DNA of 64,000 bases from Macrostomum hystrix (GCA_950097015.1 CATNEN010000025.1:3348001-3412000), one strand, 5' to 3'. Numbered from the stretch's first letter, positions 4,601 through 30,645 are shown. Notes: generated by a model from the sequence alone, not told the origin. A program made the numbers and translations.

Positions 4601-7600
4601 AGTCTCTACTCCAATCTCTACTCCAATCTCTACTCCAATCTCTACTCCATCTCTACTAGAACCTCTACTCCAATCTCTACTCCAATCTCTACTCCAATCT
4701 CTACTCCAGTCTCTACTCCAATCTCTACTCCAATCTCTACTCCAATCTCTACTCCAATCTCTACTCCATCTCTACTAGAACCTCTACTCCAATCTCTACT
4801 CCAATCTCTACTCCATCTCTACTAGAACCTCTACTCCAATCTCTACTCCAATCTCTACTCCATCTCTACTAGAACCTCTACTCCAATCTCTACTCAAATC
4901 TCTACTCCAATCTCTACTCCAGTCTCTACTCCAATCTCTACTCCAATCTCTACTCCAATCTCTACTCCAATCTCTACTCCAATCTCTACTCCAATCTCTA
5001 CTCCAATCTCTACTCCAATCTCTACTCCAGTCTCTACTCCAATCTCTACTCCAATCTCTACTCCAATCTCTACTCCAATCTCTACTCCAATCTCTACTCC
5101 AATCTCTACTCCAATCTCTACTCCAATCTCTACTCCAGTCTCTACTCCAATCTCTACTCCAATCTCTACTCCAATCTCTACTCCAATCTCTACTCCAGTC
5201 TCTACTCCAATCTCTACTCCAATCTCTACTCCAATCTCTACTCCAATCTCTACTCCAGTCTCTACTCCAATCTCTACTCCAATCTCTACTCCAATCTCTA
5301 CTCCAATCTCTACTCCAATCTCTACTCCAGTCTCTACTCCAATCTCTACTCCAATCTCTACTCCAATCTCTACTCCATCTCTACTAGAACCTCTACTCCA
5401 ATCTCTACTCCAATCTCTACTCCAATCTCTACTCCATCTCTACTAGAACCTCTACTCCAATCTCTACTCAAATCTCTACTCCAATCTCTACTCCAGTCTC
5501 TACTCCATCTCTACTAGAACCTCTACTCCATCTCTACTCCATCTCTACTAGAACCTTTACTCCAATTTCTACTCCAATCTCTACTCCAATCTCTACTCCA
5601 ATCTCTACTCCAATCTCTACTCCATCTCTACTCCATCTCTACTAGAACCTCTACTCCATCTCTACTCCATCTCTACTAGAACCTCTACTCCAATTTCTAC
5701 TCCAGTCTCTACTCCATCTCTACTCCAGTCTCTACTCCAGTCTCTACTCCAATCTCTACTCCAATCTCTACTCCGGTCTCTACTCCAGTCTCTACTCCAA
5801 TCTCTACTCCGGTCTCTACTCCAATCTCTACTCCGGTCTCTACTCCAATCTCTACTCCAGTCTCTACTCCAATCTCTACTCCGGTCTCTACTCCAATCTC
5901 TACTCCAGTCTCTACTCCAATCTCTACTCCAGTCTCTACTCCAGTCTCTACTCCAATCTCTACTCCGGTCTCTACTCCAATCTCTACTCCGGTCTCTACT
6001 CCAATCTCTACTCCGGTCTCTACTCCAATCTCTACTCCAGTCTCTACTCCAATCTCTACTCCGGTCTCTACTCCAGTCTCTACTCCAATCTCTACTCCAA
6101 TCTCTACTCCAGTCTCTACTCCAGTCTCTACTCCAATCTCTACTCCGGTCTCTACTCCAATCTCTACTCCGGTCTCTACTCCAATCTCTACTCCAGTCTC
6201 TACTCCAATCTCTACTCCGGTCTCTACTCCAATCTCTACTCCAGTCTCTACTCCAATCTCTACTCCAATCTCTACTCCAGTCTCTACTCCCATCTCTACT
6301 CTAATCTCTACTCCAATCTCTACTCCAATCTCTACTCCAATCTCCACTCCAATCTCTACTCCAATCTCTACTCCAGTCTCTACTCCAATCTCTACTCCAA
6401 TCTCTACTCCAATCTCTACTCCATCTCTACTAGAACCTCTACTCCAATCTCTACTCCAATCTCTACTCCAATCTCTACTCCAGTCTCTACTCCAATCTCT
6501 ACTCCAATCTCTACTCCAATCTCTACTCCATCTCTACTAGAACCTCTACTCCAATCTCTACTCCAATCTCTACTCCAATCTCTACTCCATCTCTACTAGA
6601 ACCTCTACTCCAATCTCTACTCAAATCTCTACTCCAATCTCTACTCCAGTCTCTACTCCAATCTCTACTCCAATCTCTACTCCAATCTCTACTCCATCTC
6701 TACTAGAACCTCTACTCCAATCTCTACTCCAATCTCTACTCCAATCTCTACTCCAATCTCTACTCCAATCTCTACTCCAATCTCTACTCCAATCTCTACT
6801 CCAGTCTCTACTCCAATCTCTACTCCAATCTTTACTCCAATCTCTACTCCATCTCTACTAGAACCTCTACTCCATCTCTACTCCATCTCTACTAGAACCT
6901 CTACTCCATCTCTACTCCATCTCTACTAGAACCTTTACTCCAATTTCTACTCCAATCTCTACTCCAATCTCTACTCCAATCTCTACTCCATCTCTACTAG
7001 AACCTCTACTCCAATCTCTACTCAAATCTCTACTCCAATCTCTACTCCAGTCTCTACTCCATCTCTACTAGAACCTCTACTCCATCTCTACTCCATCTCT
7101 ACTAGAACCTCTACTCCAATCTCTACTCCAATCTCTACTCCAATCTCTACTCCAATCTCTACTCCAATCTCTACTCCAATCTCTACTCCAATCTCTACTC
7201 CAGTCTCTACTCCAATCTCTACTCCAATCTCTACTCCAATCTCTACTCCATCTCTACTAGAACCTCTACTCCAATCTCTACTCCAATCTCTACTCCAATC
7301 TCTACTCCATCTCTACTAGAACCTCTACTCCAATCTCTACTCAAATCTCTACTCCAATCTCTACTCCAGTCTCTACTCCATCTCTACTAGAACCTCTACT
7401 CCATCTCTACTAGAACCTCTACTCCATCTCTACTCCATCTCTACTAGAACCTTTACTCCAATTTCTACTCCAATCTCTACTCCAATCTCTACTCCAATCT
7501 CTACTCCATCTCTACTAGAACCTCTACTCCAATCTCTACTCCAGTCTCTACTCCAATCTCTACTCCAGTCTCTACTCCAATCTCTACTCCAATCTCTACT

Positions 7601-8545
7601 CCAGTCTCTACTCAAATCTCTACTCCAATCTCTACTCCAATCTGTACTCCAATCTCTACTCCAATCTCTACTACAATCTCTACTCCAATCTCTACTCCAA
7701 TCTCTACTCCAATCTCTACTCCAACCTCTACTCCAATCTCTACTCCAATCTCTACTCCAATCTCTACTCCAATCTCTACTCCAATCTCTACTCCAATCTC
7801 TACTCCAATCTCTACTCCAATCTCTACTCCAATCTCTACTCCAGTCTCTACTCCAATCTCTACTCCAATCTCTACTCCAATCTCTACTAGAACCTCTACT
7901 CCAATCTCTACTCAAATCTCTACTCCAATCTCTACTCCAGTCTCTACTCCATCTCTACTAGAACCTCTACTCCATCTCTACTCCATCTCTACTAGAACCT
8001 CTACTCCATCTCTACTCCATCTCTACTAGAACCTTTACTCCAATTTCTACTCCAATCTCTACTCCAATCTCTACTCCAATCTCTACTCCAATCTCTACTA
8101 GAACCTCTACTCCAATCTCTACTCCAATCTCTACTCCATCTCTACTAGAACCTCTACTCCAATCTCTACTCAAATCTCTACTCCAATCTCTACTCCAGTC
8201 TCTACTCCATCTCTACTAGAACCTCTACTCCAATTTCTACTCCAGTCTCTACTCCAATCTCTACTCCAGTCTCTACTCCAATCTCTACTCCAATCTCTAC
8301 TCCAGTCTCTACTCCAATCTCTACTCCAATCTCTACTCCAATCTGTACTCCAATCTCTACTCCAATCTCTACTACAATCTCTACTCCAATCTCTACTCCA
8401 ATCTCTACTCCAATCTCTACTCCAATCTCTACTCCAATCTCTACTCCAATCTCTACTCCAATCTCTACTCCAATCTCTACTCCAATCTCTACTCCAATCT
8501 CTACTCCAATCTCTACTCCAATCTCTACTCCAATCTCTACTCCAG
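1688..8545. repeat. 12-bp satellite (CTCTACTCCAAT / CTCTACTCCAGT with CTCTACTAGAAC variants), ~6.9 kb
   Basis: Directly visible array; explains all STPI/GVEI/SRDW ORFs; contains 105-bp and 1221-bp higher-order repeats. Confidence 0.98.
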
Positions 8546-8673: not shown

Positions 8674-8828
8674 ATGGAGAACATTTGTACACCGAGGCTT
8701 GGGACCAGTTTTTTCGCACCCAGGAATCCTCTGCTGCTGCTGCTCTGTGTCCCACTCTTATCTGCTGCAGAGCCACCTGTCAGATCTCCCACGGCGATGA
8801 TAAATATGAGGAGAAATGGCCAGACCAG
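8674..8828 (+). CDS. GPCR exon 1 (signal peptide)
   Basis: ATG MENICTPRLGTSFFAPRNPLLLLLCVPLLSA; donor AG|GTTGGG is phase 2, matching acceptor 9854. Confidence 0.65.
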
Positions 8829-11800
8829 GTTGGGCTGTATGATTAGACAGCCTGAGTGAGTGAAGGAGAGGGTAGAGAGGAGAGACGGTGGGGTAGTGAC
8901 TGCGATTTTTCAGCAGACTGACAGACTGTGCCTGTGTTAGCCCCTTCCAGCTGGTCTAGTTGAGAGCCAGTTTGACTGTAAGAAAAGTTTTGCTTTGCTT
9001 TCTTTCCCAGATGCCAAGAGGACAGTTGAAGAAAGTACGAGTCTTTTGCCAGATTCGACTGTGCTGCAGAAATCTGATGAGTGCAAGAAACAGCTGGCTG
9101 CCTGATAGGGAATCTAAAATGTTACATCAGGGATTGTGTGTCCAGTCCAACAGTGGGGAATGAAATGCGGATGCAGGGGGTGTTTCACGATACGATTGGG
9201 GTGTCAGATACGAGATGGGGTGTCAGATACGACATGGGGTGTCAGATACGACATGGGGTGTCAGATACGACATGAGGTGTCAGATACGACATGGGGTGTC
9301 AAATACGACATGGGGTGTCAAATACGACATGGGGTGTCAGATACTACATGGGGTGTCAGACAAAGCTGTGAAGTGTCACAGGCAGAGTGGTGTCAGATGA
9401 GGCGATGAGGTGTCAGATTGGGCAGTGGACTGTCAGTTGAGGTGGTGGGGTGTCAGATAAGGTGGCGAAATGTCAGATTGAGACAGTCGCATGTCATAAA
9501 ATATGGCTACGTGTCAGATTGTGCGGTGGGGTGTCAGATATGGTTGCGGGTTGTCAGATAAGGTTGCGGGATGTCAGATAAGGGGCGGGGTGTCAGATAA
9601 GGGGCGGGGTGTCAGATAAGGGGCGGGGTGTCAGATAAGGGGCGGGGTGTCAGATAAGGTGGCGAAATGTCAGATTGAGACAGTCGCATGTCATAAAATA
9701 TGGCTACGTGTCAGATTGTGCGGTGGGGTGTCAGATATGGTTGCGGGTTGTCAGATAAGGTTGCGGGATGTCAGATAAGGGGCGGGATAGAGCAGTTGGG
9801 AGTCAGACAGGAGGGCAATAAAGAACAAGTATAGAAAAAGTTCAAATGCGCAGCCCGCCAACATCCATCCAGTCTGCCGACGAAACTCTCTCATCAGCTG
9901 CGGCGGCCTCCGAGGCTGAGTTGCGACGCCAGGAGACGAAGTGCTCAGCCCTGACGGTGGCTTCATCGGTCCAGACGCTCATCGGCCTGATGGCCGGCGG
10001 CAGCGCCAGATTTTGCCCGGCCGTTTTCGATGGCTTCGCGTGTTGGCCTCGAACCCCGGCCGGAGCCGAGGCGAGGCTGCCCTGCCCAGTCGGCGCCTTC
10101 GACAACGCCGCCGACGGCATTGTCAACGGCAGCCTCGGCGTCGGCGCCTTCGCCTGGCGACGCTGCCGACTCGACGGCCGGTGGGAGTTTCCAACGGAGG
10201 CGGAGCTGACGAAAAACGGCACCGACAGTGAAGCTGGGACTTCAGTCACGAGCAGCGCCTACTCGAACTACAGCCTCTGCAGACAGTCAAAGGCTTACAA
10301 ATACCTGGCCGATAGGGTGAGCACAGAGAAGCAGAGAAATTTCATGGAAACAATTCGGAAACCAAGGATTAACTTAAGGATTATTGTGGATCAAATAGGG
10401 GATCATTTTTAATTAAATAGAGAATGATTGTGATTCAAACAGAGGATCATTGTGAATCAACCAGAGGATCATTGTGATTCAAACAGAGGATCATTGTGAA
10501 TCAAACAGAGGATCATTGTGAATCAACCAGAGGATCATTGTGAATCAAACAGAGGATAATTGTGAATCAAACAGAGGATCATTGTGAATCAAACAGAGGA
10601 TCATTGTGAATCAAACAGAGGATCATTGTGAATCAACCAGAGGATCATTGTGAATCAAACAGAGGATAATTGTGAATCAAACAGAGGATAATTGTGAATC
10701 AAACAGAGGATCCTTGTGAATCAAACAGAGGATCATTGTGAATCAAACAGAGGATAATTGTGAATCAAACAGAGGATCATTGTGAATCAAACAGAGGATC
10801 ATTGTGAATCAAACAGAGGATCATTGTGAATCAAACAGAGGATCATTGTGAATCAAACAGAGGATCATTGTGAATCTAACAGAGGATCATTGTGAATCAA
10901 ACAGATGGTCATTGTGAATCAAGTAGGGGATCATTATGACTCAAATAGGGGATCATTATGACTCAAATAGGGGATCCTTGTGAATCAAAAAGAGAATACC
11001 TCACTATTATTTTGGTGATCAATCACAATCAACTTACGGATCATTGCAGATCAACTTCACAATAAGCAAAGTTAAGGTCTAAGACAAACTTTTTCTTAGA
11101 CAGTATCGAATCAAATTGTTGAAGCTAAGGGCTAACAATCATATACTGTGATCTCATTAAGAGTCCAAGCCTTGTTAACTGCCAAACTGTCCCTAAGAAC
11201 TTTCCTACCTCTTGCCGTTAATTTCAGTGGATAAAATCGAATTGTAGCTACGTCAGACAAACACGCTCGCATGCAGAGTGGAAAATTAACTTTTTTTCTC
11301 CTGTCCACTAGGTCCAAGGGAAATAATTGTACTTTGACTTTTGTGCAGAAAAACCTATAGCGAAAATTGCCAGCGGGGTGCGCGGTTGCCGGGCGAGTTT
11401 TAATCGCCGGGTGTTTCGATAATGTTTGCCCTGGCAAGCCTGCTCTGCTCGTGTTTGTCTCCGCGTCCACCCGTGTGTGTCCCTCAATCCCAGGGCCACT
11501 CTGCCACACTTCATTCACGTATGCAGTCTCTATGGGCCTTCTGATCTGCCACATCATTGGCATCGTTTCAACTTTTCATCTTCTTGATTACTTCTTCATC
11601 GGCTTAAGTCTAAATTTACTGTCATCTAAAATCTAGCCTGTCAATCTCACACTGCCAATCTGAGCCTGTCAATATCACCCTGTCAATCTCACCCTGTCAA
11701 TCTCACCCTGTCAATCTCACCCTTCCAATCTCACATTGTCAATATCACCGTTCAACCTCTCACTCAATTAATCTCAGCCAAATAAATATAGCTAAGTAAA

Positions 11801-14800
11801 TATTACCCTGTTATTCCAAGCATGCATATGACTACACGATTTCTGTCAATGTCTACCTTCATATTAGTCTCTAACCCTAGCTCTACCTCACTATCTATCC
11901 CAATCTCTACCCCAATATCTACCCCAGTATCTACCACAATCTCTACGGGTCTCTACCCAAATATCTACCTGTCTCTATCCAATCTCTACCGTCTCTACCC
12001 CAATCTCTACCCTAATCTATACCAGTGTCTATCCCAATCTCTACCCCAATCTCTACCGGTCTCTACCCCAATATCTACCTGTCTCTATCCAATCTCTACC
12101 AGTCTCTACCCCAATCTCTACCCCAATCTATACCAGTGTCTACCCCAATCTCTACCGGTCTCTACCCCAATCACTACCCCAATCTATACCGGTCTCTACC
12201 CCAATCTCTACGGGTCTCTACCCCAATCTCTACGGGTCTCTAAACCAATCTCTACCTGTCTCTACTACAATCTCTACGGGTCTCTACCCCAATCTCTACG
12301 GGTCTCTACCCCAATCTCTACCTATCTCTACCCCAATCTCTATCACAATCTCTACCCCAATCTCTACCACAATCTCTGCCCCAATCTCTACCCCAATCTC
12401 TACCCCAATCTCAGTCTCAATCTCAACTCTACCAGGTATGTCTCAATCTCCTCCACTTACAACCAATCACACCATGTGTCTCTGTCCTGTCTCCAGGCAA
12501 TGCCAATTAGCCTGACAACACTTCCAGCCCTAGATCCCCAGTCAGATTTCGAAAGCGGCCATATCCCCGATTCGTTATGCCTAGTTACCACTTCAGTAAT
12601 GTCTTGTTTCTGACACTTTCAAGCTTTCATCATCAAAATTGTCTGCGGTCGTTTCTGCACTTTGCCTGCCCAAATACGAGTTCTTTGCTGATGAAAACCT
12701 GCGACACACTCGCCTCAATCTCCAAGTTGTCTTCCTTTTTTTCATAATTCACGTGAGCGTAAAAAATTGAATTGATGAATCGAACCTTTTCTTCGTGAGT
12801 CTCGCTGTCTCAACTCCAACCCCCTCCGTGGAAATTTGTAGACTGCTAATTTGGCTATCCATTTTGTTTTGCTAATCTTTCTTTGCCTAGCAAACACTCC
12901 ATCATCATCTGTCTCCAAGTCTGCTTCCTGGATGGAAAATGCCTTCCAATGGGACCCGGGTCAACACCTGTCACGCAGGCAGCAGGCTGCTGCTGCTATT
13001 GCTGCATCTGGAGGGCCTCAATGGATGTCAGGGTGGTTCTCGAAATTGCCAGAAATTTGGCCGAGTGGAAAACGGGGTAGAGAGAGAGAGAGAGAGAGAG
13101 AGTAACGGAAGTCTCTAAGCCTGAGTGCTCGAATAAATTGACCAATAGAAAAGTGCTGTGAAGATTCCAGCCTTATACTTGCTAGGCACTGCGGAATGAA
13201 TGTCAGTCTCGACTGGAAAGCATTTCAGTCTGCTAGAAAGTTGAATTCATCAACCTGTTAGACTGCTGGACATTCTCTAGGAGCAGACTTGCTTAGATTT
13301 AAGCACAGTCAGTCGGATTTGAGCAAAGTTAGTCACACTTGCGCATCGTCAGTCGGATTTGAGCACAGTCAGCCAGAATTGAGCACAGTCAGTCGGATTT
13401 AAGCACAGTCCGTCACACTTGAGCACAGTCAGTCGGATTTGAGCATAGTCAGTCGGATTTGAGCACAGTCAGTCGGATTTGAGCACAGTCAGTCAGATTT
13501 GAGCACAGTCCTTCACACTTGAGCACAGTCAGTCGGATTTGAGCACAGTCAGTCAGATTTGAGCACAGTCAGTCGGATTTGAGCACAGTCAGTCAGATTT
13601 GAGCACAGTCAGTCAGATTTGAGCACAGCCCTTCACACTTGAGCACAGTCAGTCGGATTTGAGCACAGTCAGTCAGATTTTAGCACAGTCAGTAAGATTT
13701 GAGCACAGTCAGTCAGATTTGAGCACAGTCAGTCAGATTTGAGCACAGTCAGTCAGATTTGAGCACAGTCAGTCGGATTTGAGCATAGTCAGTCGGATTT
13801 GAGCACAGTCAGTCGGATTTGAGCACAGTCAGTCAGATTTGAGCACAGTCAGTAAGATTTGAGCACAGTCAGTCGGATTTGAGCACAGTCAGTCAGATTT
13901 TAGCACAGTCAGTAAGATTTGAGCACAGTCAGTCAGATTTTAGCACAGTCAGTCAGATTTGAGCACAGCCCTTCACACTTGAGCACAGTCAGTCGGATTT
14001 GAGTACAGTCAGTCAGATTTTAGCACAGTCAGTAAGATTTGAGCACAGTCAGTCGGATTTGAGAGCACATTCAATCAGATTTGAGCACAGTCAGTAAGAT
14101 TTGAGCACACTTTTTTAGATTTGAGCACACTTTTTTAGATTTGAGCACACTAATCGATAAACCGTCGGCCTGCTAGACAGTTACCATTTTCGAACTGCCC
14201 ACAGCTGCGTGTAACCCAGGTGTCCAAGCTTCGGCAGTACCAGAGACTGGAGCTTGAGAATCGCACCTGCCAGTCCCTCATATCAGCCGCTTTAGCCAAC
14301 AATGCGACTGGCTGCTTGCCAACATTCGACAATATCATCTGCTGGCCTGGCGCCCGAGCCGGCAGCCGGGTGTACATGTCCTGCCCGGACTATGTCAACG
14401 AGCTCAACAGGGCCGGCATGGCCTGGCGAGTCTGCCTGAAGGACGGCAGCTGGCATCGTCCGGTTGGGAAGCCGGGCAGCGGCGAGGGTTGGACAAATTT
14501 CACCGACTGCTCAGTGAGGAAGAGCACCAATGCGGCTCTGGTGAGCTGCGATTCCTGCTGGATATCTGTTCGCATCTTCTAGGAGCAGACTTGCTTAGAT
14601 TTGAGCACAGTCAGTCACACTTGAGCATAGTCAGTCAGATTTGAGCATATCCACTGACAATTATTAATTACTGTCACGCAGATTAATGGAAATCTAAATA
14701 ATTTATCTTGTCAAAAATTATATTAAGCCGCTCCGGTTTATTTGTAAATATTACGATTTCAATTAAATAGTATATTCCCACATTCGCAGCAACTACGCGT

Positions 14801-17800
14801 GATTCACAGCATCGGCCACATCGGTTACGGCATTTCCTTGGTGTTCCTGCTGCTGGCTATATGCATCTTGGCTGCGTTCAGGTGAGCAAACGTAAAGATG
14901 ATCATGAGATGAAATCTCAATCATATAATTTTTCGCTTGCGATCTTTGTCATGCAATTTTGCTCATACGTATAAGCTTTTAAGATTTATCATAGAATGTT
15001 GATCGTAGAATATTGGTCATGGAATGTTGGTCCTGAATGTTGGTCATAGAATAATGGTCATAGAATTTTGGTCATAAAATGTTGGTCATAGAATGTTGAT
15101 CATAGAATATTAGTCATAGAATGTTGGTCCTGAAAGATGATCAGAATGTTGATAATAGAGTGTTGGTCATACAATGTTGATCATAGAATATTGGTCATGG
15201 AATATTGGTCATGGAATATTGGTCATGGAATATTGGTCATGGAATATTGGGCATGGAATATTGGTCATGGAATATTGGTCATGGAATATTGGTCATGGAA
15301 TATTGGTCATGGAATATTGGTCATGGAATATTGGTCATGGAATATTGGTCATGGAATATTGGTCATGGAATATTGGTCATGGAATATTGGGCATGGAATA
15401 TTGGTCATGGAATATTGGTCATGGAATATTGGTCATGGAATATTGGTCATGCAATATTGGTCATGCAATATTGGTCATGGAATATTGGTCATGGAATATT
15501 GGGCATGGAATATTGGTCATGGAATATTGGGCATGGAATATTGGTCATGGAATATTGGTCATGGAATATTGGTCATGGAATGTTAGTAATAAAATCTTGA
15601 CCATCGAACCTTAATTATGACCCTCGCCAATCCCAACTGGCGCAGGCGGCTCCACTGCCAGAGAAACTGCATCCACATCAACATGTTTGTGGCCTTCGCG
15701 TTGCGGGCGGTCAGCCACTTTCTTAATTATTTTGTTGCCGTGGAAAAACAAGTGAGGCTTCTACTGAGAATATATTATTGGCTTCCTACTAATGTTACCG
15801 TAGAGCAGGGAAAAAATTCCCAAGATTGCGGGCCACAAAGCTTCTGAATCCAACCCCCTGGCCCCTTTGAATCCCTCATCTCTCCCCTGTCTTATCTCTC
15901 CCCTGTCTTATCTCTCCCCTGTCTTATCTCTCCCCTGTCTTATCTCTCCCCTGTCTCATCTGTCCCCTGTCTTATCTCTCCCCTGTCTTATCTCTCCCCT
16001 GTCTTATCTCTCCCCTGTCTTATCTCTCCCCTGTCTTATCTCTCCCCTGTCTTATCTCTTCTCTGTCTTATCTCTCCCCTGTCTCATCTGTCCCCTGTCT
16101 CATATCTCCCCTGTCTCATCTCTCCCCTGTCTTATCTCTCCCCTGTCTTATCTCTTCTCTGTCTTATCTCTCCCATTCTCATCTTTCTCCTGTCTCATCT
16201 CTCCCCTGTCTCATCTTTCTCCTGTCTCATCTCTCCCCTGTCTCATCTCTCCCCTGTCTTATCTCTCCCCTGTCTTATCTCTCCCCTGTCTTATCTCTCC
16301 CCTGTCTTATCTCTCCCCTGTCTTATCTCTCCCCTGTCTCATCTGTCCCCTGTCTCATCTCTCCCCTGTCTTATCTCTCCCCTGTCTCATCTTTTCCCGA
16401 TCTAATCTCTCCCCTGTCTCATCTCTCCCTTGTCTCATCTCTCCCCTGTCTCGTCTTTTCCCGATCTAATCTCTCCCCTGTCTCATCTCCTCCCTGTCTC
16501 ATCTCCTCCCTGTCTCATCTCCTCCCTGTCTCCTCTCTGCCCTGTTTCCTGTCCCTCTTCCGTTAATATTATCCTCAGCCGAGCAAATTCCCAATTCCTT
16601 CAGCAGGTGGCAATCTGCCGTTCGCACCAGTCACTGCTAACCTACAGCGTAATCGCCAGCTTCACCTGGGTCTTTGTAGAAGCCCTACATCTATACATGT
16701 TGATCTTTGTTAATACAATGTCCAGCTCAAGGATGTCCACAGGATCCTACATGGTCATTGGATGGGGTAAGTATCAGAGTGGCTGAGCACCCACAGGTGT
16801 GTTACATCCGTGTCAGTGAATCAGTGTACACTCTCACTGTGCCTTTGGGACTCGGCCCTCATTAGGCTAATACCCTAGATTTTTCTTTTAAAAATCTCAT
16901 TAACGGAAGTTGGCAGAAAGTGGATCAAAAAATGATATTTTGTCTTTTTTTAATCAACGCTTCATAAAAAGAGGTCCATTAACTTAGGCTTAAAATTCCG
17001 TTTGTCTTTTAGGATAATTTATGAGAGGCTTTGAGACGAAAAAATGCTAATCAAGTTAATTCATTTCTTGAAATAAGTTGTCATAAAAAATTAAGGAGTG
17101 AAAGCTAGAGTGCATGAAATAAGTTAGACAAAGCTTTTTGAATCGGCTGCAACCTCCGCATCTGCTCCACTCTCCCACCTGCTGTCAGTTGCCAAGGGCA
17201 CTTGCTTTCTCTATGCACTTTTTCCGATTTTCTCTACTCTAGTTTACTCTACTCTACTCTCTACTCTTAGCTAGTTTCTTTCCTGTCTCCATCCTCTCTC
17301 CTCTCTCCGCTCTCCTCTCTCCTTTTATTTCTTCTCCCCTCTCTCCTCTCTCCTCTCTCCTCTCTCCTCTCTCCTTTTATTTCTTCTCCCCTCTCTCCTC
17401 TCTCCTCTCTCCTCTTTCCTCTCTCCTCTCTCCTCTCTCCTCTCTCCTCTCTCCTCTCTCCTCTCTCCTCTCTCCTCTTTCCTCTCTCCTCTTTCCTCTC
17501 TCCTCTCTCCTCTTTCCTCTCTCCTCTCTCCTCTCTCCTCTCTCCTCTCTCCTCTCTCCTCTCTCCTCTTTCCTCTCTCCTCTTTCCTCTCTCCTCTCTC
17601 CTCTTTCCTCTCTCCTCTCTCCTGTCTCCTGTCTCCTCTCTCCTCTCTCCTGTCTCCTCTCTCCTCTCTCCTTTCTTTTATTTATTCTCCCCTTTCTCCT
17701 CTCCTGTCTTATCTCTCCCCCTACCTTATCTTCTCTCTCCTCTATCCTCTTTGTTGTCTCTTCTCTGGTTTCTCTTCTCTCATTTCTCCTCTCCTCTCTC

Positions 17801-20800
17801 ACTCCCCTCTCTTCATTCTCGTTTTTCCTCCCTTCTGTCTAGTCTCTGGTTTCTCCCTCTCTCGCATTTCTATTATTTTTCCATCTGACTCCAAGCAGTA
17901 ATTCTCTGACTATTTGATGTCAGGCGCCCCCTGTCTGTTCACTGGCATCTGGGTGGCCCTCCGGCTTCGGTTGGACAATCGGGAGTGCTGGCGCAAGTAC
18001 ATGCCAATGGGAGCGGACATCTGGCTGCTGAATGTCTACCTCTGCCTGCTGGTGTTCGTAAGTTCCCGATATTGCTACTAAAGTACACAGTGATCGTGTA
18101 ACGCCGACCTCTGTGATCTGTTTAATAGATTTTCTCTCCTAAATGGATAATACCTGGCAAAACCACATCGTTGGATACGATTAGACCATAGACAACACAT
18201 TTTCTATTTTTTATCCTTTAAACTCTGCGTTTTGTTTAAGAGCGAATTATTATTATTGTTGATAAAAATAATATGCTAATTGATAAAAATAGAGCGAAGT
18301 TTATGTTAGCGACTGATAAAAGTACATTTCTAGAATAAATAATAGATAATTATGAACCCGTCAAAGAAAATAGACACACAGAAGCAATACGGAACAGCCG
18401 CCAAAGATATTTAGAAAGAATTCCAGTAAGAAATAGATGTAAACAAAATATTCTGTTACCCACTATTCAAAGAAGAAATTCTGAACATCCTTTCTGACGC
18501 CGTCAGGAACATTAAAGATTCTCGCTCCACCCGATCAACCGAACTTATAATAACAAATGGAAAGCTCTAACTGGTCCGTTATACCTATTTTGAAGTAGGC
18601 GGAACTTTTTACTGCTAACGGACAGAAGCACCAAGTAGAGATAAGCAGTGACACTGTGAGATAAGCAGTGACACTGTGAGATAAGCAGTGACACTGTGAG
18701 ATAAGCAGTGACACTGTGAGATAAGCAGTGACACTGTGAGATAAGCAGTGACACTGTGAGATAAGCAGTGACACTGTGAGATAAGCAGTGACACTGTGAG
18801 ATAAGCAGTGACACTGTGGGATAAGCAGTGACACTCACTGTGAGATAAGCAGTGACACTGTGAGATAAGCAGTGACACTGTGAGATAAGCAGTGACACTG
18901 TGAGATAAGCAGTGACACTGTGAGATAAGCAGTGACGCTGTGGGATAAGCAGTGACACTCACTGTGAGATAAGCAGTGACACTGTGGGATAAGCAGTGAC
19001 GCTGTGGGATAAGCAGTGACACTCACTGTGAGATAAGCAGTGACACTGTGGGATAAGCAGTGACACTCACTGTCAGATAAGCAGTGACACTGTCAGATAA
19101 GCAGTGACACTGTGAGATAAGCAGTGACACACACACTGTGAGATAAGCAGTGACACACACACTGTGAGATAAGCATTGGCAAACTTAGAATTTTTAATAT
19201 CAGCTGTGATATTCCGAGAGCATTGTGACTAATGTGACTCCATGGCCTGAAAGAATTTCACAATCTCACCTTTCTGTCCGAATTTGAGTCGATATTGACT
19301 GGCCCAAAGCATAGACCTTGCGATTTGAATTTGAATTTTTGAAGCGATGACACACAATTGTGTGGATGAGCTTTCGTGTGTGCGTGGCCGAAATCTGTCC
19401 CACTCAGACGTCGCTAACTAATCCCCCCTGAAAAAATCCCCAGGCAAAGCCTTTGCCTGTCAAAGCAAACTCGACGCCGCCAATCCACCCACGCCTTTTT
19501 TGTCACCATAGAGAAATTTCCTCATGCGATTTCCCCTCTGCTCTGCCCCACTCCAGGTAAATGCTGGCCTGTTCGCCAGGATTGTGCGAGAACTATTCGT
19601 GAAGATGCGAAATCAGCCGCGAACCAGTGCGGCCTCGCAGAACTACAGGTGAGACTCGAGTGGGCAGGCTAGTGGCAATTAGGAGACAAAATGGAGCACG
19701 ATGCGAGACAAACTGTGAGACAAAATAGGAGATAAACTGCGAGACAAACTGTGAGACAAAATAGGAGATAAACTGTGAGATAAACTGTGAGATAAACTGT
19801 GAGATAAACTGTGAGACAAACTGTGAGATAAACAGTAGCAAGTTAGCAAAAACCATTTAAATAGTCACAGCTTATTCATTCCTGACAAATTACAGAAAGC
19901 TGTGGAAATCCACCGCTGTACTGGTCATTGTGTTCGGAATCTACTATCTGATCTTCCTGCCGCTGTCCATGATTCCCAAAGATAAGCTGGGAGCCACGCT
20001 GGACTATATTAAGCTCGCCTATGAGCACTTCTTTAACTCATTTCAGGTAAGTGAAAAGCTAGGGAAAATTTGTTTGCCAAGGGAAAATATTTCAAGATAA
20101 GACAGACAGCCACCTCACTCCTCCTGCCTCACACTAGACACTAACACTGACAGCCACCTCACTCCTCCTGCCTCACACTAGACACTAACACTGACAGCCA
20201 CCTCACTCCTCCTGCCTCACACTAGACACTAACACTGACAGCCACCTCACTCCTCCTGTCTCAGACTAGACACTAACACTGACAGCCACCTCACTCCTCC
20301 TGCCTCACACTAGACACTAACATTGACAGCCACCTCACTCCTCCTGTCTCACACTAGACACTAACACTGACAGCCACCTCACTCCTCCTGCCTCAGACTA
20401 GACACTAACACTGACAGCCACCTCACTCCTCCTGTCTCAGACTAGACACTAACACTGACAGCCACCTCACTCCTCCTGCCTCACACTAGACACTAACATT
20501 GACAGCCACCTCACTCCTCCTGTCTCACACTAGACACTAACACTGACAGCCACCTCACTCCTCCTGCCTTACACTAGACACTAACATTGACAGCTACCTC
20601 ACTCCTCCTGCCTCACACTAGACACTAACACTGACAGCCACCTCACTCCTCCTGTCTCAGACTAGACACTAACACTGACAGCCACCTCACTCCTCCTGCC
20701 TCACACTAGACACTAACATTGACAGCCACCTCACTCCTCCTGCCTCAGACTAGACACTAACACTGACAGCCACCTCACTCCTCCTGCCTCACACTAGACA

Positions 20801-23800: not shown

Positions 23801-26298
23801 TGACAGCCACCTCACTCCTCCTGCCTCACACTAGACACTAACACTGACAGCCACCTCACTCCTCCTGCCTCAGACTAGACACTAACACAGACATTTTATT
23901 TCGGATGTTAGCCAGCGTCACACATGGATTTTGTCTCGCACGAACTAGAAAGGACAACAAAAACAATTTTGTAAATTTCCTACTTTGAGCTAAGCTTCAT
24001 AGCAAAGGTAAGCAGGCAGCAGAGTGTGGCACAGAAATAGTCGATTCTGCTTGTCACTTTCCGACACCCGAATAATCCAAGACAACACGAAATTTTGCTG
24101 CGGACATCTTTTTGAAGGCTACAGAGTGCCGCAGCTCAATGCATGTTCTCAGAATTATTTTGCAACCGCGCTCTGACTGTGACTATAAGCAGGCTCCACC
24201 TTGTCTCACTAAGGGATTGAGATGAAAGCGAGCAGGGTGAGATAAATCGCGGGCCCGGAGAGGCTTGAGTTGTCGATTTACTTCGCAATTCTTTTACGTT
24301 GCAGTTTCTAGAATTTTTTTTATCTGTGAAACTAAAGGAGCTACCGAAAATACATATTCGAAATTATCGGTCTACTTAACAGTTTCTGTCAGCTCTCTGT
24401 CAGTCCTTCAGTTCCTGTCAATTCTGTCAGTTCCTGTCAGTTCCTGTCAGTTCCTGTCAGTTCCTGTCAGTTCTCTGTCAGTTCCTGTCAGTTCCTGTCA
24501 GCTCCTTTCAGTTCTCTGTCAGTTCCTGTCAGTTCCTGTCAGCTCCTTTCAGTTCCTGTCAGTTCTCTGTCAGTTCCTGTCAGTTCTCTGTCAGTTCCTG
24601 TCAGTTCCTGTCAGTTCCTGTCAGTTCTCTGTCAGTTCCTGTCAGTTCCTGTCAGTTCTCTGTCAGTTCCTGTCAGTTCCTGTCAGCTCCTTTCAGTTCT
24701 CTGTCAGTTCCTGTCAGTTCCTGTCAGCTCCTTTCAGTTCTGTCAGCCCTGTCAGTTCTCTGTCAGTTCCTGTCAGTTCCTGTCAGTTCTCTGTCAGTTC
24801 CTGTCAGTTCCTGTCAGTTCCTGTCAGTTCTCTGTCAGTTCCTGTCAGTTCCTGTCAGTTCTCTGTCAGTTCCTGTCAGTTCCTGTCAGCTCCTTTCAGT
24901 TCTCTGTCAGTTCCTGTCAGCTCCTTTCAGTTCTCTGTCAGTTCCTGTCAGTTCCTGTCAGCTCCTTTCAGTTCTGTCAGCCCTGTCAGTTCTCTGTCAG
25001 TTCCTGTCAGTTCCTGTCAGTTCTCTGTCAGTTCCTGTCAGTTCCTGTCAGTTCTGTGTCAGTTCCTGTCAGTTCCTGTCAGCTCCTGTCAGTTACTGTC
25101 AGTTCCTGTCAGTTCTCTGTCAGTTCCTGTCAGTTCCGTCAGTTCCGTCTTGTACACAGCTATTTTATCTGTTAAACTGAACTTTAGTGTAGCAATACTT
25201 TTTATCTTAAAGGATCAATGTGTATTATCGACAATAAAGGATTTCTAAGAATTGAAACGTGAGCAAAATTTCCCTATATTGAATATCTTAGATGAAAATT
25301 TCATTACATCAAGACATGGAAACATCACAAGAAAAAAATACGTATACTAAAAATGAAAATTCCGAGAAACAAAATACCCCATGGTGAAACAATCCCTGCA
25401 TTAAATTATCCCAAATACTAGGCACTGAGCACATTTGCCGCAATTTTAAATTGTCCATGCAGGGGTTTTTCGTGTCCCTGTTGTTCTGCTTTGTAAATTC
25501 TGACGTACACAAGGAGCTCAAGCGAAACCTTCTCGAGACCAAACTGGGCCGGTGGCTCAAGCGGAAAGGCTACATTCGGCCTCTGCAGGATGTCTATGGC
25601 CTGGAGCCCGAGACCCGGCGGGCCAATCGGCGAACTCGAGCCAGACCCGACAATGGCAACGGAGTGAGTCACTCACGGACTGCTCACTGAAAGATTTCAG
25701 ATTGGTGATTGGTCACTCTGTTTACTGCCTGGTTAATGATTGGTCACTCTGTTGTTTACTGCCTGGTTAATGATTGGTCATTCTGTTTACTGCCTGGTTA
25801 ATGATTGGTCACTCTGTTTACTGCCTGGTTAATGATTGGTCACTCTATTTACTGCCTGGTTAATGATTGGTCACTCTGTTTACTGCCTGGTTAATGATTG
25901 GTCACTCTGTTTACTGCCTGGTTAATGATTGTTCACTCTATTTACTGCCTGGTTAATGATTGGTCACTCTGTTTACTGCCTGGTTAATGATTGGTCATTC
26001 TGTTTACTGCCTGGTTAATGATTGGTCACTCTATTTACTGCCTGGTTAATGATTGGTCACTCTGTTTACTGCCTGGTTAATGATTGGTCACTCTATTTAC
26101 TGCCTGGTTAATGATTGGTCACTCTATTTACTGCCTGGTTAATGATTGGTCACTCTGTTCACTGCCTGGTTAATGATTTGCCACTGTGTTCACCGCCCGA
26201 TTAATAGCAATAATGCAATTTACACTCATTTTTCACAGGTGGAAGACCCGAATCTACCTCTTAAGACGCAATGCGATGTTGCTGTAACAAACGAGTAA
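8674..26298 (+). CDS. Class B1 (secretin-family) GPCR, PTH-receptor-like, 11 coding exons (whole-gene span)
   Basis: Exons 8674-8828, 9854-10316, 14220-14540, 14790-14881, 15646-15751, 16607-16766, 17924-18057, 19557-19648, 19896-20046, 25463-25663, 26239-26298 join in phase into 1935 nt (644 aa). Motifs: [58 protein letters not shown]; signal peptide and 6-Cys hormone-binding domains. Confidence 0.93.
9175..9787. repeat. 19-20-bp GGGGTGTCAGATA-core minisatellite with a ~198-bp internal duplication
   Basis: Visible units GGGTGTCAGATACGACATGG and GGGGCGGGGTGTCAGATAA; GPCR intron 1. Confidence 0.9.
9854..10316 (+). CDS. GPCR exon 2: hormone-binding ectodomain 1
   Basis: C..CPAVFDGFACWPRTPAG..CP..AWRRCRLDGRW..NYSLC (all six Cys, FD, CW, GxW); CAG| acceptor; donor AGG|GTGAGC phase 0. 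Confidence 0.9.
10425..10990. repeat. 22-bp minisatellite (TGTGAATCAAACAGAGGATCAT)
   Basis: Tandem units directly after exon 2. Confidence 0.95.
11880..12430. repeat. Degenerate 12-bp repeat (TCTCTACCCCAA)
   Basis: Tandem units related to the 1.7-8.5 kb satellite. Confidence 0.85.
12891..13076 (+). CDS. Candidate alternative/leader exon of the GPCR, upstream of ectodomain 2
   Basis: Strong acceptor (GCTAAT branch-like site, TCTTTCTTTGCCTAG|); open phase-0 frame containing ATG 12939 MPSNGTRVNTCHAGSRLLLLLLHLEG; phase 0 donor GGG|GTAGAG compatible with exon 14220. Confidence 0.35.
13300..14150. repeat. 20-bp minisatellite (GAGCACAGTCAGTCGGATTT)
   Basis: About 40 units; a few more copies at 14585-14650 on the other side of exon 3. 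Confidence 0.95.
14220..14540 (+). CDS. GPCR exon 3: hormone-binding ectodomain 2
   Basis: C..[48 protein letters not shown]; phase 0 acceptor (14220 or 14205); donor CTG|GTGAGC phase 0. Confidence 0.93.
14790..14881 (+). CDS. GPCR exon 4 (TM1)
   Basis: QLRVIHSIGHIGYGISLVFLLLAICILAAF; CAG| acceptor and |GTGAGC donor; absent from the ORF track. Confidence 0.92.
14990..15585. repeat. 14-bp minisatellite (GGTCATGGAATATT)
   Basis: Tandem units; explains ORFs 15137-15614. Confidence 0.95.
15646..15751 (+). CDS. GPCR exon 5 (ICL1-TM2)
   Basis: [36 protein letters not shown]; phase 2 to phase 0. Confidence 0.93.
15870..16560. repeat. 16-bp minisatellite (TCTCCCCTGTCTTATC)
   Basis: Tandem pyrimidine-rich units. 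Confidence 0.93.
16607..16766 (+). CDS. GPCR exon 6 (TM3-TM4 start)
   Basis: [42 protein letters not shown] acceptor (16604/16607); donor G|GTAAGT. Confidence 0.92.
16783..16845 (-). mobile_element. Fragment of the tRNA-derived SINE
   Basis: Shares CACAGGTGTGT..ACATC and CAGTGTACACTCTCACTGTGCCTT with the copy at 59317-59603. Confidence 0.6.
17230..17870. repeat. Polypyrimidine (CTCTCCT)n tract
   Basis: Nearly pure C/T; gives the artefactual EERG ORF. Confidence 0.95.
17924..18057 (+). CDS. GPCR exon 7 (TM4-ECL2-TM5)
   Basis: GAPCLFTGIWVALRLRLDNRECWRKYMPMGADIWLLNVYLCLLVF; donor |GTAAGT. Confidence 0.92.
18640..19175. repeat. 20-bp minisatellite (GATAAGCAGTGACACTGTGA)
   Basis: Tandem units. 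Confidence 0.95.
19557..19648 (+). CDS. GPCR exon 8 (TM5 end-ICL3)
   Basis: VNAGLFARIVRELFVKMRNQPRTSAASQNY; polypyrimidine acceptor CTCCAG|; donor AG|GTGAGA. Confidence 0.92.
19700..19832. repeat. 12-bp repeat (GATAAACTGTGA)
   Basis: Short tandem array in the intron between exons 8 and 9. Confidence 0.85.
19896..20046 (+). CDS. GPCR exon 9 (TM6-ECL3-TM7 start)
   Basis: [37 protein letters not shown]; donor CAG|GTAAGT. Confidence 0.93.
20105..23892. repeat. 44-bp minisatellite (GACAGCCACCTCACTCCTCCTGCCTCACACTAGACACTAACACT), ~86 copies
   Basis: Highly homogeneous 3.8-kb array in the intron between exons 9 and 10. Confidence 0.98.
24385..25147. repeat. ~10-bp minisatellite (CTGTCAGTTC)
   Basis: Tandem units; explains ORF 24265..25248. 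Confidence 0.95.
25463..25663 (+). CDS. GPCR exon 10 (TM7-helix 8-tail)
   Basis: [21 protein letters not shown]..DNGNG; donor |GTGAGT phase 0. Confidence 0.93.
25703..26185. repeat. 31-bp minisatellite (GATTGGTCACTCTGTTTACTGCCTGGTTAAT)
   Basis: About 15 units filling the last GPCR intron. Confidence 0.95.
26239..26298 (+). CDS. GPCR probable last coding exon
   Basis: TTTTTCACAG| VEDPNLPLKTQCDVAVTNE* in phase 0; GA|GTAAGC at the stop could alternatively be a donor. Confidence 0.65.
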   Translation: MEDPNLPLKTQCDVAVTNE

Positions 26299-29782: not shown

Positions 29783-30645
29783 GCTATTCCAGTATTGTAA
29801 ATTACAAAATTGCAGCCCAAATAAAAGAAGCAGGGGAATGACGAGACCACAGTTATTGTTTGACAAGGCCAGTGAGAACACTGTTATTAATGGTTTGTTT
29901 TATTTCTATGAAAGTTTTCTCAGTTGATCTATAGTTTGAAAGTGACAGTGAGAACACTGTTTTTTATGGTTTGTTTTATTTCTTATAAAGTTTTCTCTTC
30001 AAAGACACGGAAAAAAGATTACTAAGGCTCGACAAGCAAGTTTTAAAACTTTGTTGGATTCAGTTACTGAGCCAAGTGCTCATTCTCACAAGAGTAAGTA
30101 GTTAAGCTTTTCAGCATTGTACATGTTCCAGAGTAGTAGCAGCGCAGGAAAATCAAAATGTTTTTAAAATGATAAACTATAGAGGCCGTAAGTAAATAAA
30201 GTTTGTTAATTCGCAGTGCGGATCAGGTCAAGCTCGCCAGCAGTTGCAGATTTAGGTCGAGTCGAATCTGGGCATCCGCAATCGCCTGAAGTGTGGCGTA
30301 GTTTTCATTGGATGCAAATTTAACAGATTCATCCAAACCTTTATCAGTAAGCTGCATTATCTAGGCTTGCATTCTCAATATGAAATAACACTAAATAGAT
30401 TGGTATAGATTTCTATGCAGATTAAATGGCTACAACTACGAGTATCATTTCTAGGGTGTATTAGCTACTGTTGATTGACAGCTTCATTTAGCAACTGATT
30501 ATCAGTGCCTAGTCAGGATTTGATAGCTAAAATCTCATAATTTTACACACAAAGTCGTGTTAGATAATTATAGACTATACCTCAACATCAAAGGCCTAAA
30601 AACTATGATGGAGCTTTGATGTTGTTCTGGATTTGAAATCTTGAC

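What the first reader, a model, noticed from the sequence alone, without database searches (positions are those of the whole stretch)
9854..14540. Class B GPCR with two complete, swappable hormone-binding ectodomains
Seen: exons 9854-10316 and 14220-14540 each encode a full six-cysteine secretin-family ectodomain with the FD, CW and GxW residues, yet are very divergent from each other. Both end in phase 0 with GTGAGC donors a short linker after Cys6, and ECD2 also starts in phase 0, so ECD1-7TM (537 aa), ECD1-ECD2-7TM (644 aa) and ECD2-7TM are all in frame. Established: class B1 receptors normally carry one such domain, which is the primary peptide-binding site. Inference: one 7TM core with either a tandem double ectodomain or a splice-selected choice of ligand-binding domain.
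Basis: partly seen in the sequence, partly recalled or inferred. Interest (0 to 1): 0.85.

Follow-up and report, generated by a model that had tools for sequence, protein, structure and literature searches.

The report
Flatworm hormone receptor with two ectodomains
A Macrostomum flatworm gene for a parathyroid-hormone-receptor-like GPCR carries two complete hormone-binding ectodomains on separate exons; they are most likely strung in tandem on one receptor rather than swapped by splicing, a layout that databases also predict for arthropods but that nobody has tested.

Summary
Exons 9854-10316 and 14205/14220-14540 each encode a six-cysteine class B ectodomain (Pfam HRM, E 2.9e-12 and 6e-17). 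They lie upstream of seven collinear 7tm_2 exons (14790-25690) with canonical GT-AG introns.

The closest relative is a Macrostomum lignano protein that also runs ECD1, a short linker, ECD2, then 7TM. Identity to it is 46-51% in ECD1 (the fold core is near-identical), 75% in ECD2 and 73-96% in the TM exons. Its ECD2-7TM part matches human PTH1R best.

- **Tandem reading favoured.** A predicted signal-peptide exon (8674-8855) ends in phase 2 and fits only ECD1.
- **Swap only half possible.** ECD2 (phase 0/0) can be skipped in frame, but ECD1 (phase 2/0) cannot. I found no convincing phase-0 leader exon for an ECD2-only form.
- **Not unprecedented.** HRM-HRM-7tm_2 also appears in arthropod RefSeq models and in one intron-free contig. 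I found no open-access paper that discusses it.
- **No RNA evidence.** No sequencing run was listed, so every junction is inferred.

The scan also noted, unchecked, a second gene with the same layout 1.6 Mb away in this genome.

Verdict: a real gene and a new variant of a known kind. Interest is moderate.

The parts
8674..8855 (+). Predicted exon 1: ATG plus a signal-peptide-like leader (MENICT...NPLLLLLCVPLLSAA|EPP...). The donor is GA|GTGAGT in phase 2.
   Evidence: Read from the sequence. It is the only strong ATG, hydrophobic stretch and consensus-donor candidate in the 9.8 kb upstream (one weak phase-2 candidate lies at 952-1085), and its phase matches the ECD1 acceptor. Prediction only; no RNA or homolog support.
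9854..10316 (+). ECD1 exon: the distal class B ectodomain, with an N-terminal helix carrying Cys1, six cysteines and FDGFACW / AWRRC / DGRW. Acceptor gcgcag|C is phase 2; donor AGG|GTGAGC is phase 0. An in-frame ATG lies at 9846, upstream of the acceptor.
   Evidence: Pfam HRM E 2.9e-12; fold model and PDB matches; 46-51% identical to M. lignano P0001 residues 7-143, with all six Cys kept.
10317..14204 (+). Intron between the two ectodomain exons, largely minisatellite arrays (10377-10994, 11630-11764, 11868-12412, 13295-14149).
   Evidence: No Pfam domain in its longest ORFs. The only phase-0 leader candidate is very weak (11422-11472).
14205..14540 (+). ECD2 exon: the membrane-proximal, PTH1R-like ectodomain. 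It has two in-frame acceptors, 14204|14205 and 14219|14220. It is phase 0 at both ends, with donor CTG|GTGAGC.
   Evidence: Pfam HRM E 6e-17; best PDB matches are PTH1R ectodomains at 1e-15; 75% identical to P0001 residues 144-255, including LRVTQ against LQVTK.
14790..14881 (+). TM1 exon (QLRVIHSIGHIGYGISLVFLLLAICILAAF-R), starting in phase 0 and ending in phase 2.
   Evidence: matches 7tm_2 profile positions 4-30. The TM1 sequence follows ECD2 directly in the M. lignano model P0061.
15646..15751 (+). TM2 exon (RLHCQRNCIHINMF...).
   Evidence: 7tm_2 positions 31-58, E 8e-6; 73% identical to P0001.
16604..16766 (+). TM3 exon, with a NAGNAG acceptor (16603/16606). It ends ...IGW-G in phase 1.
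   Evidence: 7tm_2 positions 76-125, E 4.6e-11; 87% identical to P0001.
17924..18057 (+). Exon for TM4, ECL2 and the first part of TM5. It completes the GWGAP motif and holds the ECL2 Cys-Trp.
   Evidence: read from the sequence. There is no separate Pfam hit. The M. lignano model reads this exon in the wrong frame.
19557..19648 (+). Exon for the rest of TM5 and ICL3 (VNAGLFARIVRELFVKMRNQ...).
   Evidence: 91% identical to P0001.
19896..20046 (+). Exon for TM6, ECL3 and the start of TM7.
   Evidence: 96% identical to P0001; best PDB matches are PTH1R and PTH2R; 7tm_2 positions 202-246.
25463..25690 (+). Exon for TM7 and the C-terminal tail, up to the stop codon. A possible further donor GTGAGT lies at 25664.
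   Evidence: 84-86% identical to P0001.

Best explanation
This is one gene of a Macrostomum flatworm (about 8674-25690, + strand, ten coding exons). Its product is a class B1 GPCR whose nearest human relative is PTH1R. The main product, about 643-648 aa, most likely has a signal peptide, a distal ectodomain ECD1, a roughly 33-residue probably helical linker, a proximal PTH1R-like ectodomain ECD2, a short stalk and the 7TM core. By analogy with the two-domain model of class B1 receptors (established knowledge), ECD2 sits where the canonical ectodomain sits and is the slowly evolving one. It probably captures the C-terminal part of a peptide hormone and presents the peptide's N-terminus to the 7TM core. 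ECD1 keeps the fold core almost unchanged between the two species, but its loops and helix drift. I infer that it is an accessory module, for example a second peptide site, a longer reach or avidity for the ligand, or a modulator of ECD2. Shown: two intact HRM domains, in-frame canonical junctions, and conservation of the arrangement in M. lignano. Inferred: that both exons sit in the same mRNA, and everything about ligand binding.
For: Both exons are significant HRM domains, and ECD1 folds as a class B ectodomain. All nine proposed introns are GT-AG, and every exon-to-exon frame closes. The TM exons match 7tm_2 in collinear order. The exhaustive search with ECD1 gave one strong hit, M. lignano P0001 (E 2.7e-34). 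P0001 holds two HRMs and 7tm_2 in one model and reads ...DYLAKR-LQVTK-VSKM... across the same junction. The core segments of ECD1 are 25/27, 13/15 and 8/10 identical between the species, and all six Cys are kept. That indicates purifying selection, not a relic. The leader exon's phase (2) fits ECD1 and not ECD2. The AlphaFold model of P0001 residues 1-262 shows two ectodomain modules joined by one long helix, residues 134-174. Tandem HRM-HRM-7tm_2 occurs in RefSeq models of Penaeus, Ischnura, Centruroides and Nymphon. It also occurs on an intron-free 2.4 kb contig that is collinear with the scorpion receptor. The ECD2-7TM part of P0001 scores 128 bits against PTH1R and 90 bits against the next family.
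Against: No RNA evidence exists: no sequencing run was listed for the stretch. P0001 is an imperfect predicted model. It reads through the donor after ECD2, lacks TM1 and reads TM4 in the wrong frame, so its ECD1-ECD2 join may be a gene-finder's choice. Exon 1 is my own prediction. ECD2 is a symmetric 0/0 exon, so a form that skips it is equally in frame. The tandem structure model has low overall confidence (pTM 0.41; linker pLDDT 52-81). The second M. lignano model P0061 starts exactly at LQVTK and therefore says nothing about what lies upstream.
Confidence: 0.6

Rival explanations
1. Cassette use of ECD2. The gene makes both a tandem receptor and an ECD1-only receptor (10316 joined to 14790, about 536 aa). 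One 7TM core would then carry two different ligand-binding fronts, chosen by splicing.
For: ECD2 is 336 or 321 nt and phase 0/0, so skipping it keeps the frame. The ECD1 tail after Cys6 (12 residues) would then sit before the TM1 exon at about the same spacing as the ECD2 tail. The ECD1 and ECD2 donors are the same hexamer, GTGAGC.
Against: ECD2 is the best-conserved extracellular part (75% against 46-51% for ECD1) and is the PTH1R-like domain. A form without it would rely on the fast-drifting domain alone. In-frame symmetry is expected for any duplicated or shuffled domain exon and is not evidence of skipping. No isoform of the arthropod tandem receptors that I compared differs in the HRM region. 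There are no RNA data.
Confidence: 0.17
2. A true swap. ECD1 and ECD2 are used alternatively, giving ECD1-7TM or ECD2-7TM, with the second form starting from an unrecognised promoter or leader exon inside or outside the window.
For: Both ectodomains are complete and both can be joined in frame to TM1. An unchecked note from this scan (s1-306090) reports another receptor gene in this genome with alternative ligand-binding cassettes.
Against: The flanking phases differ (2/0 against 0/0), so one leader exon cannot serve both. The ECD2 exon has no in-frame ATG before Cys1. The only phase-0 leader candidate in the intron is 17 aa long with a poor donor. The exon lengths differ (463 against 336 nt) and the sequences are only about 30% identical, unlike typical mutually exclusive exon pairs.
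Confidence: 0.07
3. ECD1, together with exon 1, is a separate unit: a small gene for a secreted HRM-only protein (read-through ends at the stop at 10410-10412), or an exon that is no longer spliced into the receptor.
For: Without splicing, the ORF closes 31 codons after the donor. An ATTAAA-like motif lies just there. ECD1 evolves much faster than the rest of the gene. Soluble ectodomain forms of class B1 receptors are known (my own knowledge: soluble CRFR2-alpha).
Against: The fold core and all six Cys are conserved right up to the donor (...YLA[DK]R) in two species. The donor is a consensus GTGAGC in a phase that fits the next exon. The same order and strand are kept in M. lignano and, per the unchecked note s1-402487, in a paralog. 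A relic would not stay open with a 25/27-identical core.
Confidence: 0.1
4. Assembly chimera or mis-join that places an unrelated HRM exon upstream of the receptor.
For: The introns are full of minisatellites, which can mislead assemblers.
Against: An independent species and assembly (M. lignano) has the same ECD1-ECD2 adjacency in one model.
Confidence: 0.02

Closest known systems
PTH receptors: vertebrate PTH1R/PTH2R and the insect iPTHR1/2 deorphanised in Tribolium (PMC7224569)
   Same: Class B1 7TM core. ECD2 and the TM6-TM7 exon have PTH1R/PTH2R as their best solved relatives. The M. lignano ortholog's ECD2-7TM part scores 128 bits against PTH1R and 90 bits against the next family. ECD2 sits at the usual distance before TM1.
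   Different: Those receptors are described with one ectodomain; here a second complete ectodomain lies N-terminal of it. The 7TM is divergent: single exons reach only E 1e-4 to 1e-5 against PTH1R. I made no phylogeny with invertebrate iPTHRs, because none was retrievable with the searches left.
Arthropod 'calcitonin gene-related peptide type 1 receptor-like' models with HRM-HRM-7tm_2 (for example XP_063595561.1 Penaeus indicus, XP_046396658.1 Ischnura elegans, XP_067131642.1 Centruroides vittatus, KAG1650523.1 Nymphon striatum)
   Same: Two HRM domains lie before one 7tm_2, and the distal one is the more divergent. The distal domains group weakly with Macrostomum ECD1 in a domain tree (67/76 support). 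One intron-free contig carries the whole layout.
   Different: Their 7TM and proximal HRM are calcitonin/CLR-like and only distantly similar to the flatworm's. Their inter-domain linkers are longer. The grouping of distal domains may be long-branch attraction, so shared origin is unresolved. They are predictions; I found no open paper that discusses the double domain.
Independent tandem HRM duplications: the dipteran PDF-receptor-like XP_055374844.1 (two HRMs) and the fish CGRP-receptor model XP_008287491.1 (four HRMs)
   Same: Extra HRM copies lie before one class B 7TM.
   Different: There the copies cluster with each other (100/96 and 98/95), so they are recent in-gene duplications. Macrostomum ECD1 and ECD2 do not cluster with each other and are old or of different origin.
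Known N-terminal splice variation in class B1 receptors: PAC1 short forms and the alternative first exons of CRFR2 alpha/beta/gamma (recalled from my own knowledge, not checked here)
   Different: Those variants change a segment or the leader of a single ectodomain. None chooses between two complete six-cysteine domains. Here the exon phases allow only skipping of ECD2.

Membership tests
Class B1 (secretin-family) GPCR | Seven-transmembrane core of the 7tm_2 type | tested here: met
   Exons match PF00002 in collinear order: TM1 exon positions 4-30, TM2 31-58, TM3 76-125, TM6/7 202-246. The ortholog P0001 matches at E 1.3e-23. The GWG-AP motif and the TM3 and ECL2 cysteines are read from the sequence.
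Class B1 (secretin-family) GPCR | N-terminal hormone-receptor (HRM) ectodomain with six cysteines and the conserved Asp/Trp core | tested here: met
   Met twice: E 2.9e-12 and 6e-17. C, W and D columns are invariant in a 26-sequence alignment. ECD1's fold matches GCGR, GLP1R, PTH1R and CLR ectodomains.
Class B1 (secretin-family) GPCR | Short stalk between ectodomain and TM1, with no GAIN/GPS autoproteolysis domain (which would make it class B2) | tested here: met
   About 20 residues separate Cys6 of ECD2 from the hydrophobic start of TM1. No other domain was found in the intron ORFs.
Class B1 (secretin-family) GPCR | Activated by a peptide hormone and couples to G proteins | not testable with these tools
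   Needs expression and cAMP/Ca2+ assays.
PTH-receptor type (PTH1R/PTH2R/iPTHR) | Groups with PTH receptors rather than other class B1 subfamilies | tested here: inconclusive
   PTH1R is the best solved relative for ECD2 (1e-15), for the TM6 exon (5e-5) and for P0001 residues 144-583 (4e-36, against 1e-24 for VIPR1). The TM3 exon prefers VIPR1 and GIPR, and language-model neighbours are CLR, CRHR2 and CTR clusters. No tree with invertebrate iPTHRs was made.
PTH-receptor type (PTH1R/PTH2R/iPTHR) | Activated by PTH-type or iPTH/PXXXamide-type peptides | not testable with these tools
   An unchecked scan note (s1-084984) reports iPTH-like peptide genes in this genome.
Tandem-ectodomain class B1 receptors (HRM-HRM-7tm_2) | Two HRM domains and one 7tm_2 in one polypeptide | tested here: inconclusive
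   Met at the gene level: same strand, in-frame canonical junctions, and the same order in the M. lignano model. The mRNA junction 10316-to-14205/14220 could not be checked, because no run was listed.
Mutually exclusive (swappable) ectodomain exons | Both alternative exons share the same entry and exit phases, so either fits between the same neighbours | tested here: not met
   ECD1 enters in phase 2 and leaves in phase 0. ECD2 enters and leaves in phase 0. The only good leader exon ends in phase 2.
Mutually exclusive (swappable) ectodomain exons | Transcripts contain one exon or the other, not both | not testable with these tools
   The look-up of sequencing runs listed no run, so read laying could not be used.

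The most novel reading that the evidence does not exclude
Splicing of the symmetric ECD2 exon gives this flatworm two pharmacologically different receptors from one 7TM core: a tandem ECD1-ECD2 form and an ECD1-only form. They would be tuned to different peptides, for example the two related iPTH-like peptides that another note reports in this genome. Alternatively, in the tandem form the distal ectodomain acts as a built-in co-receptor that reshapes ligand selectivity, as RAMPs do for CLR.
Probability: 0.17. Interest if true: 0.75.

Novelty: new variant of a known kind. Interest (0 to 1): 0.5.

Why it matters
The working model of class B1 receptors is built on a single ectodomain: it catches the peptide's C-terminus, and the 7TM core reads the N-terminus. 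This model underlies drugs against PTH1R, GLP-1R and CGRP receptors. A receptor with two complete ectodomains in series asks what a second one does, for example a second site, avidity, self-inhibition or a change of selectivity.

Such layouts sit unremarked in arthropod and flatworm gene predictions. Macrostomum lignano is a laboratory flatworm with RNAi and transgenesis, so the question is directly testable there. If the receptor is PTH-type, it would also give a receptor candidate for the PTH-like peptides reported in this genome.

If only the ordinary reading holds, it is a lineage-specific domain duplication in an otherwise standard neuropeptide receptor.

Tried and rejected
- **RNA evidence.** The look-up of sequencing runs on 9800-14900 listed no run. 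Its single use was then spent, so read laying could not be run.
- **M. lignano genomic DNA.** I wanted it for intron and splice-site comparison and for dN/dS. The look-up of encoding contigs had neither P0001 nor P0061 on record.
- **Word-indexed protein searches.** P0001 whole, its ECD2 region, and residues 60-257 returned only P0001 itself and the frameshift-ridden M. lignano model P0061. No further flatworm orthologs or transcript fragments spanning the ECD1-ECD2 junction were obtained.
- **Literature.** Searches for two, tandem or double HRM domains in class B receptors found nothing relevant, because 'HRM' mostly means high-resolution melting. The arthropod class B papers I read do not mention a double domain.
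- **Domain tree.** It did not resolve where ECD1 came from. ECD1 does not group with ECD2, and it joins the arthropod distal domains only weakly.
- **First leader-exon donor.** My first choice at 8828 (GTTGGG) was replaced by the consensus GTGAGT at 8855/8856. Both are phase 2.
- **Intron ORFs.** The ORFs at 11135-11563 (minus strand) and 12851-13102 have no Pfam domain.
- **Atlas neighbours.** They gave only generic class B1 clusters.
- **Joined model.** The spliced protein of this window was never assembled, searched or folded. All searches were exon by exon by reference, and the tandem fold used the stored ortholog P0001 residues 1-262.


Full report
**What is in the sequence**

The + strand between about 8.6 and 25.7 kb holds a multi-exon animal gene. 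Exon 9854-10316 is open from 9822, with an in-frame ATG at 9846. It encodes about 154 residues with six cysteines and the FDGFACW, AWRRC and DGRW motifs. Exon 14220-14540 encodes 107 residues with six cysteines and FDNIICW, AWRVC and DGSW.

Pfam scores both as HRM (PF02793): E 2.9e-12 and E 6e-17, against a 26.2-bit cut-off. This is far beyond chance. ECD2's best solved relatives are PTH1R ectodomains (1e-15), followed by CLR. ECD1 is more divergent, with its best matches at about 1e-4 to CRFR1 and the glucagon receptor.

An AlphaFold model of ECD1 built on a 26-sequence alignment has mean pLDDT 75.6. It shows a long N-terminal helix followed by short strands. In the PDB it matches only class B1 ectodomains, with probability 1.00 and TM-score by target up to 0.83 with CLR. 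The two domains are about 26-34% identical to each other.

**Gene model**

tblastn with the closest relative, plus reading of the splice sites, gives these downstream exons:

| Exon | Coordinates |
|---|---|
| TM1 | 14790-14881 |
| TM2 | 15646-15751 |
| TM3 | 16604 (or 16607)-16766 |
| TM4 / ECL2 | 17924-18057 |
| TM5 / ICL3 | 19557-19648 |
| TM6-TM7 | 19896-20046 |
| TM7 and tail | 25463-25690 |

- All introns are GT-AG with GT[AG]AG-type donors, and every phase closes.
- The exons match the 7tm_2 profile in collinear order.
- The GWG-AP motif and the TM3 and ECL2 cysteines are present.
- Only about 20 residues separate Cys6 of ECD2 from TM1, so there is no GAIN/GPS domain. The gene is class B1, not an adhesion GPCR.

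Upstream I propose a leader exon at 8674-8855 (MENICT...NPLLLLLCVPLLSAA|EPP...), with donor GA|GTGAGT in phase 2. This matches the phase-2 acceptor at 9853|9854. A scan for ATG plus hydrophobic stretch plus consensus donor found this as the only strong candidate in 9.8 kb upstream (a second, weak phase-2 candidate lies at 952-1085). It found no phase-0 candidate upstream, and only one very weak one inside the ECD1-ECD2 intron.

**Organism and relatives**

The exhaustive search of 1.84 billion representatives with ECD1 gave one strong hit. P0001 (E 2.7e-34) is a 583-aa UniRef protein of Macrostomum lignano. The window is thus from a related Macrostomum flatworm, which agrees with another note of this scan.

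Identity to P0001 differs by exon:

| Part | Identity to P0001 |
|---|---|
| ECD1 | 46-51% |
| ECD2 | 75% |
| TM exons | 73-96% |

Within ECD1 the drift is in the N-terminal helix and the loops, including a 12-residue insertion. The core segments are 25/27, 13/15 and 8/10 identical, and all six cysteines are kept. ECD1 is therefore under purifying selection on its fold and is not a relic.

P0001 contains two HRMs and 7tm_2. It reads ...DYLAKR-LQVTK-VSKMLQYKRLELENRTC across the junction. In the window the in-frame LRVTQ lies just upstream of 14220, behind a good acceptor (cccacag|CTG at 14204|14205). A second M. lignano model, P0061, starts exactly at LQVTK and then runs ECD2 directly into TM1. 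I therefore place the ECD2 exon start at 14205, with 14220 as a possible alternative 15 nt downstream. Both are phase 0.

P0001 is a flawed model. It reads through the donor after ECD2, lacks TM1 and reads TM4 in the wrong frame. It shows conserved adjacency and an in-frame join, but it is not proof of a transcript.

**Tandem or swapped?**

- ECD1 enters in phase 2 and leaves in phase 0. ECD2 enters and leaves in phase 0.
- The two exons therefore cannot be mutually exclusive between the same neighbours.
- The leader exon fits only ECD1, and the ECD2 exon has no ATG before its first cysteine.
- The in-frame options are both exons, or ECD1 alone by skipping ECD2. Skipping would remove the best-conserved, membrane-proximal, PTH1R-like domain.
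- The linker from Cys6 of ECD1 to Cys1 of ECD2 is 33 residues. In an AlphaFold model of the ortholog's first 262 residues it forms one continuous helix (residues 134-174) between two ectodomain modules. Confidence is modest: pTM 0.41, and linker pLDDT 52-81.

I rate a constitutive tandem receptor as the most likely main product (0.6). ECD2 skipping as a meaningful second isoform gets about 0.17. A separate or unused ECD1 gets about 0.1. A true swap from an unseen leader gets about 0.07.

No RNA evidence could be had.

**Which receptor family?**

The ortholog's ECD2-7TM part scores 128 bits (4e-36) against PTH1R, against 90 bits for the next family, VIPR1. The TM6-TM7 exon also prefers PTH1R and PTH2R. 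The TM3 exon prefers VIPR1 and GIPR. Language-model neighbours are generic class B1 clusters.

I call it PTH-receptor-like, but subfamily membership is not settled. Insect PTH-type receptors and their PXXXamide/iPTH ligand are known (PMC7224569). An unchecked note of this scan reports iPTH-like peptide genes in this genome. These would be natural ligand candidates.

**Is a double ectodomain new?**

Not as a database pattern.

- Other hits of the ECD1 search have two HRMs before one 7tm_2. They are RefSeq 'CGRP type 1 receptor-like' models of Penaeus indicus, Ischnura elegans, Hetaerina, Centruroides vittatus and Nymphon striatum. A PDF-receptor-like protein of a dolichopodid fly has two, and a fish model has four.
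- A 2.4 kb contig from run SRR19434712 is collinear with the scorpion receptor across HRM1, HRM2 and 7TM. It has no introns and one frameshift, so it is most likely mRNA-derived.
- RefSeq isoform pairs of these genes differ only downstream of the HRMs.
- In a domain tree, the fly and fish copies cluster with each other, which indicates recent duplications. Macrostomum ECD1 does not cluster with ECD2. It joins the arthropod distal domains only weakly (67/76), on long branches.
- The origin of ECD1, ancient tandem or independent gain, is therefore open. The flatworm 7TM is only distantly similar to the arthropod tandem receptors.

I found no open-access paper that discusses two HRM domains in a class B1 receptor. 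The arthropod class B papers I read do not mention it either.

**Verdict**

This is a real, intact receptor gene with two complete ectodomains, conserved as such in at least two Macrostomum species. An unchecked note (s1-402487) also reports the layout in a second gene 1.6 Mb away in this genome.

The tandem reading is favoured, and the 'swappable' reading is only half possible. It is a new variant of a known kind. Its interest is moderate and would rise if splicing or pharmacology shows that the two domains are used differently.

Noticed in passing
window 2001-8544, 10377-10994, 13295-14149, 14989-15599, 15878-16545, 17292-17811, 18638-19130, 20098-23893, 24380-25146, 27800-29900: Almost every intron and flank of this gene is filled with long minisatellite arrays, for example a 44-bp unit repeated 86 times at 20098-23893. 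Several are strongly strand-skewed, with GC skew about -0.85 over 2-8 kb and +0.8 at 28-30 kb.
   Followed up: partly
window 14204-14220 and 16600-16607: There are tandem in-frame acceptors: two AGs 15 nt apart before ECD2 (14204|14205 and 14219|14220), and a NAGNAG acceptor (tcagcag) before the TM3 exon. Either could give small isoform differences.
   Followed up: no
window 25664-25690: A consensus donor GTGAGT in phase 0 lies 24 nt before the stop codon of the last exon. The M. lignano relative has a different C-terminal end after ...NG, so a further 3' exon may exist.
   Followed up: no
P0061 (M. lignano, 256 aa, named 'Cytochrome b561 domain-containing protein'): This is a second M. lignano model of the same receptor type. 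It starts exactly at LQVTK and runs ECD2, TM1, TM3 and TM4/5 without introns, but with many frame changes. It may be a decayed or retro-copied paralog, or a model built on error-rich sequence. Its name looks spurious.
   Followed up: partly
P0020/P0060 (Stegastes partitus) and P0033/P0048 (Condylostylus longicornis): A fish 'CGRP type 1 receptor' model has four HRM domains in a row, and a fly 'PDF receptor' model has two. In both, the copies are each other's closest relatives. Extra ectodomains seem to have arisen repeatedly in class B receptors, or these are gene-model artefacts.
   Followed up: partly
window 35454-36402: Two adjacent ATG-started ORFs lie on the + strand, of 163 aa and 141 aa, and have no Pfam match. 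The first carries an H-x-x-R...Y-like stretch (LSHHLGHSRKVHQTFYRL) that recalls tyrosine recombinases of mobile elements. That resemblance is from memory and was not confirmed.
   Followed up: partly
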